Assembly: GCA_013239625.1 (NCBI GenBank)
Contig: MU054220.1
Span: 4,029,374 to 4,093,373, forward strand
Length of the DNA stretch: 64,000 nt
Direction: 5' to 3'
Source: Lama guanicoe
Taxonomy: Eukaryota
The notes beneath the pieces were generated by a model. It did not search any database and was not told where the DNA came from. It saw nothing but the letters and a program-made list of their open reading frames with translations. Below are positions 201 to 60,825 of this stretch, piece after piece; the first letter of the stretch is position 1; every line of letters starts with the position of its first letter. A program made the translations under genes and the position numbers.

Positions 201-823
201 ATTTATTTATTTACTTACTTACTTACTTTCAGTGAAGTATAGTTAATTTACAATATTGTTTTAGTTTCAGGTGTATAGCAAATTAATTTGGTTATACATA
301 TACATGTATATGTCTATATTCTTTTTGAAAATTCTTTTTCATTATAGTTTATTAAAAGATATTGAATGTATTTCCCTGTGCTATACAGTACATTCTTGTT
401 GTTTATTTTATATATGATAGTGTACATCTGTTAATCCCATACTCCCAATTTATCCCTCTCCTCCTTCTCTTTGGTAAACATAAGTTTGTTTTCTATGTCA
501 TGACTCTGTTTCTGTTCTGTAAATAAGTTCATTTGTACTATTTTTTTAGATTCCACATATAAGTGATATCATATTATATTTGTCTTTCTCTGTCTGACTT
601 ACTTCACTTAGTATGATAATCTCTAGGTCTGTCCATGTTGCTACAAATGGCATTGTTTCATTCTTTTTTCTGGCCCAGTAATATTCCACCACCCACATAC
701 ACATCACATCTTTATTCATTCATCTGTCAATGGACACTTAAGTCACTTCCATGTCTTGGCTATTGTAAATAGTGCTGCTATGAACACTGGGGTGCATGTA
801 TCTTTTTGAATTAGAGTTTTTTT
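201..823 (-). mobile_element. 5'-truncated cetartiodactyl-type L1 (ORF2 C-terminus + 3'UTR), runs into N gap
   Basis: Minus-strand peptide KKTLIQKDTCTPVFIAALFTIAKTWK is the L1 ORF2p C-terminus; (TTTA/CTTA)n tail at 201-230; same subfamily type as the copies at 21422 and 26595. Confidence 0.92.
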
Positions 824-962
824 NNNNNNNNNNNNNNNNNNNNNNNNNNNNNNNNNNNNNNNNNNNNNNNNNNNNNNNNNNNNNNNNNNNNNNNNNNNNN
901 NNNNNNNNNNNNNNNNNNNNNNNNNNNNNNNNNNNNNNNNNNNNNNNNNNNNNNNNNNNNNN
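824..962. other. Assembly gap (N run)
   Basis: 139 N. Confidence 1.
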
Positions 963-13989: not shown

Positions 13990-14440
13990 TCCGTTACAGT
14001 AAAGTTAGGTGATACAAAGATAGAGTAAGTCCCAAGATCTTAGTGGCTTAACAGAATAGAAATTTATTTCTTGTTTGCATAAAGTCTAAATGGCAGTGGG
14101 ATACCAGGGAGGTGTTAGTCCTGAGTGCTCAGGAACCCAGGTTGATGGAGTCTGTGCCATCTTTATCTCCTAGGTTCAAAGGTCACGCTGGGCATCAACA
14201 TTTAGCCAGAGACACAAGAGAGAGGAAGTGGAGGACCACCAGGACGGATTCTGTGGGGCTGGCCCGAGGGAACTCATCACACTGCCCATATTCCATCAAC
14301 TAGAACCAGTCATGTGACGACAGAGAGATGAAGTGGGCTGGAAAGTGTGGTCCCCAGCAGGACTGCTGTTTGCCAGCAATGACTGCACTCTGGAAGCAGA
14401 GCATAAATCTTGGTGGGTAGACAGCCAGCACTGTCTCAAT
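13990..14440 (-). mobile_element. MaLR LTR (MLT1K-like)
   Basis: cttagtggcttaacagaatagaaatttatttcttg; agaaccagtcatgtgac; ctgggaagtgtggtc-like segment; ggtgggtagacagccagc. Confidence 0.65.
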
Positions 14441-20809: not shown

Positions 20810-22250
20810 ATCAAAGAGGGCTTCAGAGAGGAGGTGACATTTGAGGCATTTCCAAATTAATTTTATATGAACAGTATTGATATTAATCCTTTCATTTAAC
20901 AAATATTTCAAGCTTTTATTGTGTGTTGGGGATAGAGTGATAAACCAGACAGAGGAGTCCTTGCCTTTAAGGAACTTTACCTTCTAGGCACTAACAAGTA
21001 AGTGAATAAGATAATTTCAAGTAGGTGGCATTGTTGTAGATAAGGTAAGATGATAAAACAAAGAGATAGGAGGTGAAGAATGGGGAGGAGAGACTTAAGA
21101 GTGGTGGTCAGGAGAGGCCTCCCTGAGGAGATGAAAGTTCACTTATAATATACCCCAGTGTTTAGAAGGAGCCAGAGCTGTGAGGACCTGAGGGTCACTC
21201 AGGCCACTGTGTGGAGAATAGACTGTAGTGGGCAGGGGCAAGTGGGAGACCACTTAGGAAGCAGTACCATCAGCGAGGGGGCTGTGATGGAGAATTGGAA
21301 CAAGAGAAAGTGGGGGAAATGCAGGGAGGTGGCCAACATGGGGCAGATTTAGGAGGTGGCACAATCTGCTCATGGATCAGCCTCTGAGCATAAAGAAAGT
21401 GAGCTATCAAAGGTGACTTCTGACCCTCCTACACTGTTGGTGTGAATGTAGATTGGTGCATCCATGATAGAGGACAATACAGAGGTTCCTTAAAAAACTA
21501 AAAACAGACTTACCCTTCAGCAATCCCACTCCTGGGCATGTATCTGAAGAAAACTCTAATTTGAAAAGACACATGCACTCCAGTGTTCACAGCAGCACTG
21601 TTTACAGTAGCCAAGACATGGAAACAACCTAAATGTCTACCAACAGATGAACAGATAAAGAAGTTCTAGTATGTATATACAATGGAATACTACTCGGCCA
21701 TTAAAAAGAATAAAATAGTGCCATTTGCAGCAACAAAGATGGACCTAGAGACTATCATATTACGTGAAGTCAGGCAAAGACAAATATCATATGATATCAC
21801 TTATATGTGGAATCTTAAAAAAATGATACAAATTTTATTTGCAAGCCTGAAATAGATTCACAGACATAGAAAACAAACTATGGATACCAAAGGGAAAGGT
21901 GAGGAAGGATAAATTAGGAGTTTTGGATTAACAGATACACATTACTATATATAAAACAGATAAATAACAAATAAATAAATATAGCACAGGGAACTAAATT
22001 CAATTTCTTGTAATAAGCTACAATGGAAAAGAATCTGAAAATATATGTATATGTATATATACATATAACTGAATTGGTTTGCTGTACACCTGAAACTAAC
22101 ATTGTAAATCAACTACAGTTCAGTAAAAAATGAAATTAAAAAAAAGGTGACTCCTTGATTTGGGGCTTGAACAATATTTTATGAACGGTGAGGCTGTTTT
22201 TCAAAGTGAGAAACAGAGGATGAAACAGGTTTTTGATGGGAGGAAATAAA
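20810..22250 (-). mobile_element. L2 remnant interrupted by the L1 at 21422-22142
   Basis: ttcatttaacaaatattt; ggtcaggagaggcctccctgaggag; continues after the L1 with aaggtgactcc...ggcttgaacaa. Confidence 0.7.
21422..22142 (+). mobile_element. 5'-truncated cetartiodactyl-type L1 with TSD
   Basis: ORF2 C-terminus/3'UTR (ccctcctacactgttggt...ggaaaagaatctgaaa...gctgtacacctgaaactaac), A-tail, 13-bp TSD aaaggtgacttct (21409-21421) / aaaggtgactcct (22143-22155) with 1 mismatch. Confidence 0.93.
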
Positions 22251-25742: not shown

Positions 25743-26594
25743 GATCCTATGTTTATTGACAATAAAATGTATGGCCAGCACCAGCCACCTCATGGATGAA
25801 AAGAGAAGGAAAGTTCTCAGCAGGCTTCTTTGAAATTGACCTGGAAGTGTATCCTCAGGAAGTAGATCCTTGGGGCGCCAGACCCTGGGCACGCCCTGAG
25901 TGGTTATTGGGGTAGGGGATGGGGACTAGCCCCAGACCGGGGTCTGGTTATTCTGTGAAGCCGCAGCAGACTCAGCAGAAGGAAAGGAAGCTCCTTCTTG
26001 GCAAAAACGTCAAGGTAGTAAGGTTGACGAGATATCCTGATGGAGCCCAGCATGTTCTCTATAAGGGAGAAAATTTGTGAGTGGAGAGAAGATTGGCGTC
26101 CTAACCTGAGTTCCCTTCCATAACCCTGAGCCTCAGCCTCAGGCCTAGGGCCTTGGATAGGAGCAGAAGCACCTCCTGGGATGCAACCCAAGCAGCAGGC
26201 TGGGAAGAAGTCCTGTCGGGGAACATGTTTTTAATCTGAGGATGCTTGAGAAGAAAAGCTACTTCAAGGCTTGCTGGGTGGGTCTTTGAGAGCGGGGAGG
26301 GGCCCCTCAGGGTTCAGGGATTCCAAATGAACAAAGGTTTTTGCTGCACTATCAAATGTTTCTATTAAATATTTCTTCAAAGACATTTTAAAATTATTCA
26401 GGCCCCCTCCACTCTACCTAATTTAATTTTTTGTATGTCGTCATTAAAAAATAACCTCGGTGTTTGCTTTTTCTTCTTAAGAAAATGCTAAGTATTTATT
26501 ATAGCATGTTAAGAAAATTAACATAAGGGGGAAAAAAGAAATTTACCCATGCATTAATTAGGGTAGGCCACCTGATGTTAATAAACAACTTCCA

Positions 26595-27260
26595 GGAAAA
26601 CAATATGGAGATTCTTTTAAAAACTAAAAATAGAGTTGCCAGATGATCTAGCAATCCCACCCCTGGGCATGTCTCTGGAGGGAACTCCAATTTGAAAAGA
26701 CACAGGCACCCCAATGTTCATAGCATCACTATTTACAACAGCCAAGACATGGAAGCAACCTAAATGTTTATGGATAGATGACTGGATAAAGAAGATGTGG
26801 TCTATATATACAATGGAATATACTCAGCCATTAAAAAAGGATGAAATAATGCTATTTGCAGCAACATGGATGGATGTAGAGATGATCATACTAAGTGAAG
26901 TAAGTCAGACAGAGAAAGACAGATGTCATATGATATCACTTATGCATGGAATCTAAAAAAATGACACAAATGAACTTATTTACAAAACAGAAACAGACTC
27001 ACAGACATAGAAAACAAGCTTATGGTTACCAAAGGAGAAGAGGGGGGATAAATTAGGAGTTTGGGATTAGCAGGTACAAACTACTATACATAAAATAGAT
27101 AAATAACAAAGTCCTACTGTATTGCATAGGGAACTACATTCAACATTTTGTAATAACCTATAATGAAAGAAAAAATATATATATATATAACTGAATCACT
27201 ATGTCTACACCAGAAACTAACACAACATTGTAAATTAACTGTATTTCAATTTTTAAAAAA
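26595..27260 (+). mobile_element. 5'-truncated cetartiodactyl-type L1
   Basis: ORF 26714-26956 MFIASLFTTAKTWKQPKCLWIDDWIKKMWSIYTMEY is the L1 ORF2p C-terminus; 3'UTR ends tcaatttttaaaaaa. Confidence 0.95.
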
Positions 27261-28553
27261 TGTTATGATTTCATTGGCTGTGAATAGATCAACAAATAAC
27301 ATCTCACTTTATTTACCAAAAGCCAAGTTAAAATATGCAAACTGTCCTGGGGCTTGCCCATAGACACTGTTCAATGGTGTGTCTGCAGTTAGCCATTAAG
27401 AACTAGTTCTGTGGACATTACTGTAACAGACAGACCATTTGAAGAAAGGGTGGGCTCCAAGAAGAGAAGTGGTGCCTTTATCCAGCTTGCCCACAGGAGA
27501 TGAACTGTGTCTGTAGCCTGGGGACAGGCCGAGCTGTAATACTTGCTCAGGACAAGAGATGCTTTATTGAGGCATCACCCGGAATGGGACATGGATGGCG
27601 GAAGGTGCGTACTGTTTGGGTGAACATAGGGTCTTTAGGCCGCAGTTTATCTTCTGAAATGTACCCTTCAAACTTCTGCTCATCCTTCAGAACAAGATGG
27701 AGAAAGATCTTGGTAACGTGAGAAATGAAGATGATTAGCGGCATTTGTGTTTCCTGACACTGGAAATGTCAGCATGAAGAACTTGCTTTGAGGGAAAAAT
27801 AGTTTTAAAAAAATGTGCAGTTTGAAATGAAACTCTTTACCCTAGTTAGCAAAAGGTGTGAATAGAATGGATGAAATGAAATGAAATGGAATAAGTCTTA
27901 TGAGAAAGAAGGGCTTTTCTTGGGAGCTGTTTTGAAGGAGTAATTGGGCAATTAGTCCTTTTCTTAAAACTCTTTAAAGATTCTAAGCCTACTAAAATGC
28001 TCTGGGATTTAGCTTTAGAACATTTTATTTTCAGGCTTTATAGCAGTTCCTGTTTTCCACTGCAGCAGGTGAAAATCTAATCTGGCCCAATGGAAAGGAA
28101 GAGAAGATATCAGAGCGTGAGGTTATATTCCATTGCCCATGAAGCTTTACTATTTAGTCGCTCAAGTTCTTTATCTCAACTTTTAAAAATGAAGCATTGT
28201 TACACTTTGTAAAATAGTGTTCACCCCATGACAAGATGGAATCTCACAAGTCCTAAAGAAAAGGTCACTATCTGCCTTAAAAATTATGATATGCATCTGT
28301 TATTCAGATTAACACATAGAACTAAATAATTTCTATTTGTGAATAGCAGCAAATTCACTGGTATATGAAGTATGGAGCCAATGAATTGAATTTAAAGAAA
28401 TTTTGGTTTTCTTTCAGTATGCAAAGGTGGTGTTGCTTTTCAAGTCAAACATAAACCTGTCACAGTATTTCTGTTGGTTTCTTAAAAGAACTAAAGAACA
28501 AACTGATGTATCTTCAAATTAAAAACTTCACTGAAGTTAAAAAAAAAAGAAAA
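27261..28553 (+). other. L1 3'-transduced unique sequence with poly(A) tail
   Basis: Non-repeat DNA between the L1 end and ATTAAA (28518-23) plus poly(A) (28539-28553); the whole L1+segment is bounded by 12-bp TSD aaacaacttcca (26583-94 / 28554-65). Confidence 0.85.
27290..27684 (-). pseudogene. Putative transduced terminal exon of an unidentified gene
   Basis: Minus strand: pyrimidine-rich acceptor ctttctccatcttgttctgaAG|G at 27684; open frames DEQKFEGY...KHLLS* (stop 27547) or (x)MSRSLKGTFQK...PFRVMPQ* (stop 27564); local CpG enrichment; AATAAA at 27313-27308 followed by a GT-rich tract. Confidence 0.45.
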
Positions 28554-29002
28554 AAACAACTTCCAAATCTCAGTTGCTTAGCAGAATAGATTATTTTTGC
28601 TCATGCTAAAGTCCAGTGACACTATTTGGTCTATGACCTTTTCTCTTGATGATTCAGGCACCTGGAATCCTCATGTCTTGTGGCTCCATCACCCTCTAGG
28701 GCCCTGAGTGCTTATCTCAAGCCAGTAGGTGGGGAAAAAAGAGAGTAAAGACTGTGCAGCAGGTTTTATGGGTTAGGCTTGGAAATGGCAAGCATTATTT
28801 CTCCCCCCATTTCATTGGCCAGAATTCACCCACATGGCCACATCTGACTGCAAGGGAAGCTGGGAAATGTAGTCTAACTGTGTATCAGAAAGAAGAGAAA
28901 TGGGTTCTGGTGAACGTACCAGTGTCTGCCACAACCCAGATTTCAACATCCTGACAGAACCCCTGTTCACATTTGAGGGATCTCCTTCCATTCTTTTCTC
29001 TA

Positions 29003-29683
29003 TGTCATGTACAGTTTGTGTAATAAAGCATTTGGCTGGTCTTTGTCTCTAGTTCCTGGGAGGCAACCTCTAAGCCATTGGAAATTGCTGAGTAACAGGA
29101 CTGCATGATTATCCCTGGTGGGCCCCTCGGACCACACCTGATAGTTTATGGCAACAGGATGGCTCAGGATGGGGCCTGGCCACGCCTTAAAGACCAACTG
29201 TGTGATTAGAGGGTTAGAACTTTGAGCCACGTAATACCAACCCAACTTCTGGAGCGCGGAGAGGGCTGGAGATCGAGTTCAGTCAGTCATGCCTATGCAA
29301 TGAAGCCTCATTAAAAACTCTGGACACTGAGGCTCTGGAGAGGTCCTGGTTGGCAGTACTCTTTGTCATATGCCAACACCAGGAGTATAACACTGTCCTG
29401 CAGGTGACGGAAGCATCGTATTTGGAACCCTCCCAAACCAAGCCTCATATGTGTCTTCTAATTTGTGCCCTTTTGCTATAATAAAACCATAGTCATAATT
29501 AATAGTGCTTTTTTGAGTTTTGTAAATCTTTCTAGCAAATCATTAAACCTGTGGGGGTCCATGGGGACCTCAGAGTCTATAGCCAGCTGGTCTGAAGTAC
29601 AGGGACCCTTGGTGTCTGAAGTCAGGGCAGTCTTGTAGAGATCCATGGTCTTAGTCTGTAAAGTTTGGCCCAATTCCAGGTCC
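29003..29683 (+). mobile_element. MER21-like ERV LTR
   Basis: ctggtctttgtctctagttcctggg; accacacctgatagtttatg; aagaccaactgtgtgattagagggttagaacttt; ctagcaaatcattaaacctg; agccagctggtctgaagtacagg. Confidence 0.75.
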
Positions 29684-34647: not shown

Positions 34648-35000
34648 TTCTATGGACTGAATTGTAACNNNNNNNNNNNNNNNNNNNNNNNNNNNNNNNN
34701 NNNNNNNNNNNNNNNNNNNNNNNNNNNNNNNNNNNNNNNNNNNNNNNNNNNNNNNNNNNNNNNNNNNNNNNNNNNNNNNNNNNNNNNNNNNNNNNNNNNN
34801 NNNNNNNNNNNNNNAGCTCTCTCTGCCGTGCAAGAATACAGTGAAAAGATCTGCAAGCCAAAAAAAAGAGCTCTCACCATGAACCGAACTGACCAGCACC
34901 ATGACCTTGGGCTTCTCAGCCTCTGAAACTGTGAGAAATGTGTCTGCTGTTTGAGCCACCCCATCTATGGTGTTCTGTCACTGCGGCCTGAGCCATCCTG
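34648..35000 (+). mobile_element. MLT1A/B-like LTR containing N gap 34669-34814
   Basis: ctatggactgaattgt start; ctgcaagcca...cttctcagcctctgaaactgtgagaaat...ctgctgtttgagccacc. Confidence 0.75.
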
Positions 35001-35139: not shown

Positions 35140-35480
35140 CCCATTAAATAGCAACCTCCCCTTCTCGCCTCCCCCCAGTCCCTGGTAACATCTCTTCCAC
35201 TTTCGGTCTCTGTGAGTTTTCCTGTTCTAGGTACTTCATATAAGTGGAATCATACAATATTCATCCTTCTGTATCTGACTTTTTTCACTTAGTGTAATGT
35301 TCCTATGGTCCATCTATGTTGTGACATGTGTCATAGTTCCATCCTTCTTATGGCTGAATGATATTCCATTATATGTACAGGCCACAGCTTGTTTACCCAT
35401 TCCTCTATTGATGGTCACTTGGGTTGTTTCCACCTTTTGGCTATTGCAAACAATGATGCTATGAACATGGGTGTCCACAG
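35140..35480 (-). mobile_element. L1MB-like 3' fragment
   Basis: ttcatataagtggaatcatacaatat...atggctgaatgatattccatt...gggttgtttccaccttttggctatt. Confidence 0.85.
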
Positions 35481-40581: not shown

Positions 40582-40739
40582 GGGGGGAGGGTATAGCTCA
40601 GTGNNNNNNNNNNNNNNNNNNNNNNNNNNNNNNNNNNNNNNNNNNNNNNNNNNNNNNNNNNNNNNNNNNNNNNNNNNNNNNNNNNNNNNNNNNNNNNNNN
40701 NNNNNNNNNNNNNNNNNNNNNNNNNNNNNNNNNNNNNNN
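40582..40739 (+). mobile_element. tRNA-derived SINE head (camelid Vic-1-like); body lost in N gap 40604-40739
   Basis: ggggggagggtatagctcagtg with a Pol III A-box-like TAGCTCAGTG immediately before the gap. Confidence 0.6.
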
Positions 40740-46399: not shown

Positions 46400-46890
46400 T
46401 TTATCTAGAAAGCAAAGTCTGAGCAGCATTATTAACAACAACCAAAAGGTGGAAGCAAGCANNNNNNNNNNNNNNNNNNNNNNNNNNNNNNNNNNNNNNN
46501 NNNNNNNNNNNNNNNNNNNNNNNNNNNNNNNNNNNNNNNNNNNNNNNNNNNNNNNNNNNNNNNNNNNNNNNNNNNNNNNNNNNNNNNNNNNNNNNNNNNN
46601 NNNNNNNNNNNNNNNNNNNNNNNNNNNNNNNNNNNNNNNNNNNATGTGAGGCCTCTAGTGCAGTCAAGTTAAACAGAGAGAAAGAAGAATGGTGGTTGCC
46701 AGGGTCTAGGGGGAGGGGGGAAAGGGGAGCTGTTGTTTAATGAGTATAGAGTTTCAGATTTGCAAGATGAAAAGCTCTGGAGATCTGGTTCACAACAATG
46801 TGAATATACTCAACACTAATGAACGGTGTAGCTGAAAGTGGTATAAAATGGTAAATGTTACATCTGTTTGAATGCAATCAAAAAAACATA
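46400..46890 (+). mobile_element. L1MB-like 3' end with N gap 46462-46643
   Basis: gcagcattattaacaacaaccaaaaggtggaagcaa...agaatggtggttgccaggg...tatagagtttcagatttgcaagatgaaaa. Confidence 0.85.
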
Positions 46891-59369: not shown

Positions 59370-60825
59370 CTTTTCAGTTGCTTTAGAATACACATAACAT
59401 AAAATTTACCTTCTTAACCAATTTTAAGTGTATAGTTCAGGGGTATTAAGTACATTGTTTTGCAGCCATCACCGCCATCCATCTCCATAACCTTTTTCAT
59501 CTTGGAAATCTGAAACTCTATACCGAATAAACACTAACTCCCCATTCTCCCCTCCTCCACCCCGTTCGCTGGCAACCACCATTAGACATTCTGTCTCTGA
59601 TTTTGACTCCTCTAAGTACCTCCTATAAGTGAAATCATACAGTATTTGTCTTTTTGTGACTGGTTCATTTCACTTAGCATAATATGCTCGATACTCATCC
59701 ATGTTGTAGCGTGTGGCAGAATTTCTTTCCTTCAAGGCTCCGNNNNNNNNNNNNNNNNNNNNNNNNNNNNNNNNNNNNNNNNNNNNNNNNNNNNNNNNNN
59801 NNNNNNNNNNNNNNNNNNNNNNNNNNNNNNNNNNNNNNNNNNNNNNNNNNNNNNNNNNNNNNNNNNNNNNNNNNNNNNNNNNNNNNNNNNNNNNNNAGAA
59901 TATACCAAAAAGCAGAATTGCTGGGTCGGATGGTAATTCTATTTTTAATGTTTTGAGGAATGTCCACACAGTTTTTCACAGCAGCTCCATCAGTTTATGT
60001 TCCCACCATCAGTGCACAAGTGTTCCAATTTCTCCACATCCTTGCCAACACTTGTTGTTTTCTGTTTGTTTTTTATTACCAATAGCCATCCTAGTGGGTG
60101 TGAAATGGTCTCTCATTGTGGTTTTGATTTGCATTTCCCTAATGATTAGTCTAATGTCTTTTCACATACTTTTCTCACTTTTTGAATTGTTTATTTTTCT
60201 GTTGTTGAATTTTAAGAGTTCTGCATATTTTCTGGATATTAATCCCTTATCAGATACATTATTTGCAAATATTTTCTCCCATTCTGTGAGTTGCCTTTTT
60301 GCTCTGTGGATGGTGTCCCCTGATGCACAAAATTTTTAAGTTTTCATGACGTCCCATCTGTCTGTTTTTTCTTTTGTTGCCTCTGCCTTTGGTGTCACAT
60401 CCAAGCCATCATTACCAAATCCAATGTCATGAAGCTTTTGTCCAATGATTTCTTCCGAGAGCTTTACTGTTTTAGGTCTTACATTTAGATCCTTAATTCA
60501 TTTTGAATTAATTTTTGTCTGTGGTGTTAGGTAAAGGTCCAACTTCGTCTTTTGCATGTGGGTATTAACTTTTTCCAGCACATTTGTTGAAAAGCTGTCC
60601 TTTCCCCACTGAATGGTCTTGGCACTCTTGTCAAAAAATCGTTTGGCCGTATACACGAGCATTTATTTCTGGGCATTCTTCTCTCCCAGAAGTCTGTGTG
60701 TTTGTCTTTAGGCTGACACCACACTGCTTTGATTACTGTAGTTCTGCAGCAAGTTTTGAAATCAGGAAGCATGCGTCCTCCAATTTTGTTCTTCTTTTAC
60801 AAGATTGTTTTGGCTATTTAGGGAC
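59370..60825 (-). mobile_element. L1MA/MB-like ORF2 C-terminus + 3'UTR with N gap 59743-59896
   Basis: Minus-strand [16 protein letters not shown] and LPDFKTCCRTTVIKAVW are ORF2 remnants; cataacataaaatttacc 3' end. Confidence 0.92.

What the first reader, a model, noticed from the sequence alone, without database searches (positions are those of the whole stretch)
26583..28565. L1 insertion carrying a ~1.28 kb 3' transduction, proven by nested TSDs
Seen: the 12-bp TSD aaacaacttcca flanks the L1 fragment (26595-27260) plus unique DNA (27261-28538) plus poly(A), not the L1 alone. ATTAAA lies about 15 nt before the poly(A). Removing the insert restores a continuous MLT1 LTR with its own ACCCA TSD. 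Established: this is the signature of L1 read-through and 3' transduction by target-primed reverse transcription. Inference: a second copy of 27261-28538 exists elsewhere in the genome, next to the source L1.
Basis: partly seen in the sequence, partly recalled or inferred. Interest (0 to 1): 0.8.

Follow-up and report, generated by a model that had tools for sequence, protein, structure and literature searches.

The report
L1 insertion with 1.28-kb 3' transduction
A truncated L1 retrotransposon, about 1.3 kb of non-repeat DNA and a poly(A) tail sit together inside one exact 12-base target-site duplication in an old LTR, which is the ordinary, well-known signature of an L1 that read through into its neighbouring DNA and copied it here; the donor locus could not be reached with the tools.

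Summary
AAACAACTTCCA occurs exactly at 26583-26594 and 28554-28565. Between the two copies lie:
- a 5'-truncated L1 (26595-27260), made of the last ~120 ORF2 codons plus the 3' UTR and ending at the canonical L1 terminus with only A6;
- 1278 nt of DNA with no other copy in the window (27261-28538);
- ATTAAA (28518-28523), followed 15 nt later by an A10-G-A(4-7) tail.

That ATTAAA is the only canonical poly(A) hexamer on the + strand from 26900 to 28540. The L1's own end has none.

The TSD and the right flank belong to an LTR family. A second, uninterrupted, diverged copy of that family lies at 14008-14373.

The best reading, at about 0.75, is L1 read-through followed by 3' transduction through target-primed reverse transcription. 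"Proven" is too strong, because no donor locus was seen:
- two metagenome scans were blank.

Part of the carried DNA (27348-28110) has DNA-level homologues in other organisms. These are unnamed ORFs, and the match crosses stops and frames, so this is old single-copy-type DNA and not a coding exon.

The scan's first readers have noted several other candidate L1 transductions elsewhere in this genome. This is an ordinary kind of event and of low interest.

The parts
26545..26549 (.). ACCCA, left copy of the 5-nt duplication flanking the host LTR
   Evidence: same pentamer at 28934-28938
26550..26594 (+). 5' part of the host LTR (starts TG); its last 12 nt are the left TSD copy
   Evidence: Only the last ~8 nt align to the related LTR copy at 14008-14373. 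The first 33 nt could not be assigned by any test (shuffle test not significant).
26583..26594 (.). Left copy of the 12-nt target-site duplication AAACAACTTCCA
26595..27260 (+). 5'-truncated L1. It holds the ORF2 C-terminal codons up to the ORF2 stop at 26954-26956, with an in-frame TGA at 26693-26695. The 3' UTR follows at 26957-27260 and ends ...CAATTTTTAAAAAA, with only A6 and no AATAAA/ATTAAA.
27261..28538 (+). 1278 nt of non-L1 DNA with no other copy in the window: the putative transduced 3' flank of the donor L1
27348..28110 (-). Stretch with DNA-level homologues in other organisms. It matches the unnamed ORFs P0001 and P0002-P0009, and the match runs across stop codons and frame changes. 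A 15-codon block around 27660-27705 is identical to P0001; the P0002 group matches 11 of these codons.
28518..28523 (+). ATTAAA polyadenylation hexamer, 15 nt before the tail. It is the only AATAAA/ATTAAA on the + strand in 26900-28540.
28539..28553 (+). Poly(A) tail, A10-G-A4. The next three A could belong to either the tail or the TSD.
28554..28565 (.). Right copy of the 12-nt target-site duplication
28566..28933 (+). 3' part of the host LTR (ends CA)
   Evidence: The joined LTR (413 nt) matches a diverged copy at 14008-14373 with nhmmer E 2.8e-6.
28934..28938 (.). ACCCA, right copy of the LTR's 5-nt duplication

Best explanation
A donor L1 elsewhere in the genome was transcribed from its own promoter. 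Its 3' end carried no strong polyadenylation signal. The copy here ends CAATTTTTAAAAAA, with no AATAAA or ATTAAA. RNA polymerase II therefore ran 1.28 kb into the flanking DNA, and the RNA was cleaved and polyadenylated about 15 nt after the first canonical hexamer, ATTAAA.

The L1 machinery then nicked the bottom strand of an old LTR at 5'-GTTT/ATTAAC-3', which reads AT|AAAC on the top strand. It primed on the poly(A) tail and reverse-transcribed the flank followed by the L1 3' UTR. It stopped about 120 codons before the end of ORF2, which gives the 5' truncation. Second-strand cleavage 12 nt away produced the AAACAACTTCCA duplication.

Shown here: the anatomy, the L1 identity, the canonical L1 terminus, the single hexamer, the exact TSD and the repeat nature of the target.

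Inferred: that one read-through RNA from an L1 promoter carried both parts, and that a donor locus exists.
For: - The exact 12-nt TSD encloses the L1, the extra DNA and the tail. The chance expectation at these positions is 5e-7 to 3e-4.
- The L1 piece matches ORF2p residues 1195-1273 of 1274 with E 3.8e-24.
- The L1 piece ends at the same terminus as two other L1 copies in the window.
- The tail follows ATTAAA by 15 nt. That ATTAAA is the only canonical hexamer in 1.6 kb. Dinucleotide shuffles expect 3.9 hexamers, and the probability of none upstream is 0.018.
- The target AT|AAAC matches 4 of 6 positions of the L1 endonuclease preference TT|AAAA. The preference is cited from my own knowledge; the site is read.
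- The TSD sequence is part of an LTR family whose other copy at 14008-14373 is uninterrupted there.
- The carried DNA has homologues in other organisms on contigs up to 14.7 kb, as expected for ordinary single-copy DNA picked up from another locus.
- The defining anatomy of TSDs, L1, unique sequence and non-reference poly(A) is as described in PMC4862182. About 25% of L1 insertions in a tumour cohort carried a transduction (abstract of PMC13009371).
Against: - No donor locus was seen, so there is no direct proof that 27261-28538 lies 3' of an L1 anywhere.
- Only six A separate the L1 end from the carried DNA, although a donor L1 would be expected to bring its own tail. The tail may have been short or may have shrunk.
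- The missing L1 hexamer could have been lost after insertion.
- The genomic position of the homologues from other organisms is unknown. Presence of this DNA at the syntenic site in outgroups is therefore not excluded, though the perfect TSD and the nearly pure tail argue for a much younger event.
Confidence: 0.75

Rival explanations
1. This is a 5'-truncated processed retrocopy of a host RNA polymerase II transcript (mRNA 3' UTR or lncRNA) that happened to contain an old sense-oriented L1 3' fragment 1.28 kb before its poly(A) site. L1 proteins copied it in trans. The L1 part was a passenger, not the driver.
For: This gives exactly the same anatomy at this locus: TSD, tail, ATTAAA and the single hexamer. 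The short A6 after the L1 end would fit an old, decayed L1 embedded in a transcript.
Against: From my own knowledge of mammalian genomes, transductions are far more numerous than retrocopies of transcripts with a sense L1 end in their last 2 kb. No tool here measured this. The minus strand of the carried DNA, not the plus strand, holds the conserved block and an AATAAA, so no plus-strand host gene is indicated.
Confidence: 0.08
2. Two separate events produced the block. A truncated L1 inserted first and made the 12-nt TSD. Later an unrelated 1.28-kb retrocopy inserted into that L1's poly(A) tail in the same orientation. Its own duplication consists only of A and cannot be seen.
For: A-tracts are present on both sides of the 1.28-kb piece: A6 at 27255-27260 and A10-G-A7 at 28539-28556. 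L1 endonuclease prefers such sites (own knowledge). Nothing at this locus excludes the scenario.
Against: It needs a rare retrocopy to land in an L1 tail a few bases long. It also leaves unexplained why the L1 end lacks its own hexamer and why the first hexamer downstream is the one used. The combined right-hand tail is only 18 nt.
Confidence: 0.06
3. This is a template-switch chimera. Reverse transcription started on the poly(A) tail of an unrelated RNA, ran 1.28 kb, then jumped to the 3' end of an L1 RNA and continued.
For: One TSD and one tail enclose two parts of different origin, and the join lies exactly at the 3' end of the second template. That is the known pattern in U6/L1-type chimeric retrogenes (own knowledge).
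Against: Known chimeras mostly carry small nuclear RNAs or other short RNAs as the 5' part and are far rarer than transductions (own knowledge). A jump onto polyadenylated L1 RNA would be expected to leave a longer A-tract than A6.
Confidence: 0.04
4. The 12-nt repeat is a chance match, and the L1, the 1.28-kb DNA and the A-run are unrelated neighbours.
For: Exact 10-11-nt repeats are common in this AT-rich stretch, and one other exact 12-mer pair exists.
Against: The repeat lies exactly at the L1 5' break and exactly after the A-tail. The expected number of chance matches there is about 5e-7. The repeated 12-mer is part of the LTR that is split by the block.
Confidence: 0.01

Closest known systems
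L1 (LINE-1) 3' transduction by read-through transcription and target-primed reverse transcription
   Same: - L1 3' end in sense orientation.
- Non-L1 DNA directly after it.
- A downstream poly(A) hexamer 15 nt before an A-tail.
- One 12-nt TSD around the whole block.
- A-rich endonuclease-type target and 5' truncation inside ORF2.

This is the anatomy described in PMC4862182.
   Different: Nothing differs in kind. The length of 1.28 kb is on the long side for germline events (own knowledge). Only A6 lies between the L1 and the carried DNA. The donor was not identified.
Processed retrocopies (processed pseudogenes) made by L1 in trans
   Same: TSD, poly(A) tail, hexamer before the tail and 5' truncation.
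   Different: The 5' part is an L1 ending precisely at its own terminus. No coding sequence or known gene was found in the carried DNA.
Chimeric retrogenes made by L1 template switching (U6/L1 type)
   Same: Two-part insert inside one TSD, with the join at the 3' end of the 5' part.
   Different: Here the 5' part is L1 itself and the 3' part is unique DNA, which is the arrangement expected from simple read-through.

Membership tests
L1 3' transduction | A genuine L1 sequence, in sense orientation, ending at the canonical L1 3' terminus | tested here: met
   ORF 26714-26953 matches the last 79 aa of human L1 ORF2p with E 3.8e-24. The piece is 80-82% identical to other L1 copies in the window. 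Its terminus is shared with two other copies.
L1 3' transduction | Non-L1 DNA directly 3' of the L1 end, closed by a poly(A) tail that is preceded by a poly(A) signal at 10-30 nt | tested here: met
   27261-28538 has no other copy in the window. ATTAAA is at 28518-28523 and the tail starts at 28539.
L1 3' transduction | One target-site duplication enclosing L1, extra DNA and tail | tested here: met
   Exact 12-mer at 26583-26594 and 28554-28565. The chance expectation is at most 3e-4.
L1 3' transduction | Weak or bypassed L1 polyadenylation signal | tested here: met
   There is no AATAAA or ATTAAA between 26900 and 28517. Shuffles expect 3.9, and the probability of none is 0.018. This is the state of the copy now; the state in the donor is unknown.
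L1 3' transduction | L1 endonuclease-type target site (TT|AAAA-like) | tested here: inconclusive
   The top strand reads AT|AAAC at the left TSD boundary, matching 4 of 6 positions. This is compatible but not discriminating.
L1 3' transduction | A donor locus where the same DNA lies immediately 3' of an L1 and continues past the cleavage site | not testable with these tools
Two metagenome scans were blank. The findings search by sequence was blank.
L1 3' transduction | Empty (pre-insertion) site in relatives or outgroups | not testable with these tools
The only indirect evidence is a related LTR copy at 14008-14373 that is uninterrupted at the matching point.
MaLR (MLT1-type) LTR as the target | TG...CA termini and a 5-nt target duplication | tested here: met
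   TG is at 26550 and CA at 28932-28933. ACCCA is at 26545-26549 and 28934-28938. The joined length is 413 nt.
MaLR (MLT1-type) LTR as the target | Similarity to the MLT1 family consensus | not testable with these tools
   No repeat library was available. A diverged relative in the window (nhmmer E 2.8e-6, joined positions 41-354) shows that it is a repeat family. The name MLT1 rests on my memory of the consensus only.

The most novel reading that the evidence does not exclude
The L1 did not carry junk. It duplicated an evolutionarily old, constrained non-coding element. Within 27348-28110 there is a 15-codon-long block, about 45 nt, that is identical at the translated level to the copy in one other lineage; a second lineage keeps 11 of the 15 codons. 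The surrounding frames are not kept. The new copy inside the LTR could have been put to use as a regulatory or RNA element. That would make this a natural case of L1-mediated shuffling of a functional non-coding module.
Probability: 0.07. Interest if true: 0.4.

Novelty: new member of a known kind. Interest (0 to 1): 0.15.

Why it matters
L1 3' transduction is a textbook route by which mammalian genomes duplicate and shuffle non-repeat DNA. A clean 1.28-kb case is a useful marker. The carried sequence tags the donor L1 and so identifies a once-active source element. The nested order of LTR first and L1 block second gives a relative date. It does not change any concept. Its value is as a well-documented example and as a lineage marker if the insertion proves to be clade-specific.

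Tried and rejected
There is no read or contig evidence on a donor copy or an empty site. No letters of 26595-26635 were sent to any search tool afterwards; later calls started at 26700 or beyond.
The contigs that carry the homologous DNA in other organisms could not be read.
3. Two scans of JGI metagenome contigs, with alignments of the homologous ORFs, found nothing.
4. The search of earlier findings by sequence was blank.
5. The minus-strand ORF 27547-27744, raised as a lead by the sibling note s1-860416, has no Pfam family and no PDB relative. Among 1.8 billion representatives it has a single unnamed hit. That hit and its relatives align across stops and frame changes. I therefore reject the reading as a protein-coding terminal exon. 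A non-coding exon is not excluded.
6. Rfam gave nothing above noise. Tandem Repeats Finder gave only (AT)7 and (ATGAA)4.
7. The left 33 nt of the LTR (26550-26582) could not be tied to the related LTR copy (shuffle test not significant).
8. I did not try a DNA-pattern scan of metagenomes for host contamination.

Full report
**1. Observation**

- AAACAACTTCCA stands at 26583-26594 and again at 28554-28565. With one mismatch the repeat extends to 15 nt (family D2).
- In 26000-29200 there are only two exact 12-mer direct-repeat pairs. The other is a purine run, GGGGAAAAAAGA.
- From base composition, about 3e-4 copies of this 12-mer are expected in the 3 kb upstream of the tail. About 5e-7 are expected within 2 nt of the point where L1 similarity begins.
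- The repeat is therefore not a chance match. It sits exactly where a target-site duplication should: just before the 5' break of the L1 and just after an A-tail.

**2. The parts**

L1 piece, 26595-27260:
- It matches other L1 fragments in the window (337-818 minus strand, 21474-22052 plus strand) at 80-82% identity.
- Its ORF 26714-26953 aligns to residues 1195-1273 of the 1274-residue human LINE-1 ORF2 protein with E 3.8e-24.
- The stop at 26954-26956 is therefore the ORF2 stop, and 26957-27260 is the 3' UTR.
- An in-frame TGA lies upstream at 26693-26695 (read).
- In an alignment with the two other L1 3' ends in the window, all three stop at the same place...ACATTGTAAATTAACT.T..TTCA followed by A-rich sequence. 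The L1 piece therefore reaches its canonical terminus.
- It ends CAATTTTTAAAAAA, with six A only.

Carried DNA, 27261-28538:
- It has no other copy in the window, no tandem structure and no Rfam match worth the name.

Signal and tail:
- ATTAAA lies at 28518-28523.
- The A-run starts at 28539, 15 nt later, and reads A10-G-A7. The last three A also belong to the TSD.

**3. A detail that fits read-through**

On the + strand between 26900 and 28540 there is no AATAAA, and the only ATTAAA is the one at 28518. The L1's own end thus carries no canonical hexamer, and the first one downstream is the one followed by the tail.

Dinucleotide-preserving shuffles of 26900-28517 hold 3.9 such hexamers on average and none in 1.8% of trials. 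For the unique part alone, 10% of shuffles hold none. This is modest, but it points the right way. A caveat is that the L1 hexamer could have been lost after insertion.

**4. The target**

With the block removed, TG at 26550 and CA at 28932-28933 bound a 413-nt element. It is flanked by ACCCA at 26545-26549 and 28934-28938.
- nhmmer with the joined element finds a diverged relative in the window at 14008-14373 (E 2.8e-6, joined positions 41-354).
- A local alignment runs AACTTCCAA-ATCTCAGTTGCTTAGCAGAATAGA against AAGTCCCAAGATCTTAGTGGCTTAACAGAATAGA.
- The duplicated 12-mer is therefore itself part of this repeat family, and the relative is uninterrupted at that point.
- The first 33 nt of the element could not be tied to the relative.
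- The name MLT1 fits my memory of MaLR consensus sequences, but no repeat library was available to test it.
- The nick site deduced from the left TSD boundary is 5'-GTTT/ATTAAC-3' on the bottom strand, or AT|AAAC on the top strand. This matches 4 of 6 positions of the known L1 endonuclease preference TT|AAAA (own knowledge).

**5. What the carried DNA is**

A sibling note of the scan (s1-860416) proposed an antisense terminal exon at 27290-27745. I tested its minus-strand ORF, 27547-27744.
- It has no Pfam family and no PDB relative.
- In an exhaustive HMMER search of 1.84 billion representatives it has one hit, P0001. This is an unnamed 190-aa ORF from a single 1417-nt Logan contig.
- A word search with P0001 found P0002. 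This is a 183-aa unnamed ORF with eight variants, 96-99% alike, on 13 contigs of up to 14.7 kb in ENA metagenome assemblies. I could not see the contigs or their organisms.
- tblastn of these ORFs against the window gives matches over 27348-27840 and 27570-28110 on the minus strand. The matches run through stop codons and change frame.
- This is DNA-level homology of non-coding sequence, not a conserved reading frame.
- One block of 15 codons (IFLHLVLKDEQKFEG) is identical between the window and P0001. The P0002 group shares its first 11 codons.

I conclude that at least 60% of the carried DNA is old, single-copy-type DNA that exists in other organisms. It is not a protein-coding exon. Whether it is a non-coding exon or a conserved element is open.

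**6. Where else it occurs**

The sampled 31-mers of 27261-28538 are held at 0.88-0.97 by 20 DNA runs. These come from 7 studies under four coded organism labels. The segment is therefore near-identical in several closely related taxa or populations. This does not say at which locus.

**7. The decisive test could not be run**

It needs mammalian assemblies or reads, and none of the available routes worked.
- Two metagenome scans found nothing.
- The scan's own index held no look-alike.

**8. Mechanism and rivals**

The simplest account is one RNA. An L1 transcript ran past its weak 3' end, was polyadenylated after the first ATTAAA 1.28 kb downstream, and was inserted by target-primed reverse transcription with 5' truncation in ORF2.

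Three rivals give the same picture at this locus:
- a retrocopy of a host transcript that contains an old L1 fragment;
- a second retrocopy nested into the poly(A) tail of an earlier L1 insertion, whose all-A duplication would be invisible;
- a template-switch chimera.

I rank all three well below transduction. Transductions are common: TSD, L1, unique sequence and poly(A) is the standard definition in PMC4862182, and about a quarter of insertions in one tumour cohort carried one (abstract of PMC13009371). The rivals need rarer coincidences. The relative frequencies are from my own knowledge, not from a tool.

The short A6 between the L1 and the carried DNA is the one feature that sits a little less easily with transduction.

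My estimates are: transduction 0.75, host-transcript retrocopy 0.08, nested insertion 0.06, template switch 0.04, chance 0.01. The remainder is unassigned.

**9. Verdict**

The event is of a well-known kind, and first readers have flagged several other candidates in the same genome. Interest is low. The only mildly unusual points are the length of the carried piece and the old, partly conserved non-coding stretch it contains.

Noticed in passing
window 27348-28110 (minus strand): This non-coding stretch is homologous to unnamed ORF calls from other organisms: P0001 (Logan) and P0002-P0009 (ENA metagenome assemblies, probably host DNA). A 15-codon block is identical to P0001, and the P0002 group shares 11 of its codons, while the surrounding frames are broken.
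   Followed up: partly
window 14008-14373: A diverged second copy of the same LTR family that hosts the insertion (nhmmer E 2.8e-6). It is uninterrupted at the point where the focal LTR is split.
   Followed up: partly
window 337-818 (-), 21474-22052 (+), 35240-35471 (-), 59625-59706 (-): Other L1 3' fragments, 74-82% identical to the focal one. The copy ending near 22100 has an A-rich tail reading A6-TG-A3-TT-A8.
   Followed up: no
window 824-962, 34669-34814, 40604-40739, 46462-46643, 59743-59896: Five N blocks of 136-182 nt (757 N in all). They were left as they are.
   Followed up: no
window 26528 and 28731: A second exact 12-mer pair, GGGGAAAAAAGA, straddles the block. It is a purine run, one copy lies outside the LTR, and I judge it a chance match.
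   Followed up: no
window 27307-27312 (minus strand): An AATAAA on the minus strand lies about 240 nt downstream of the stop of the minus-strand ORF. This is the basis of the sibling note's 'terminal exon' idea. No coding support was found.
   Followed up: partly
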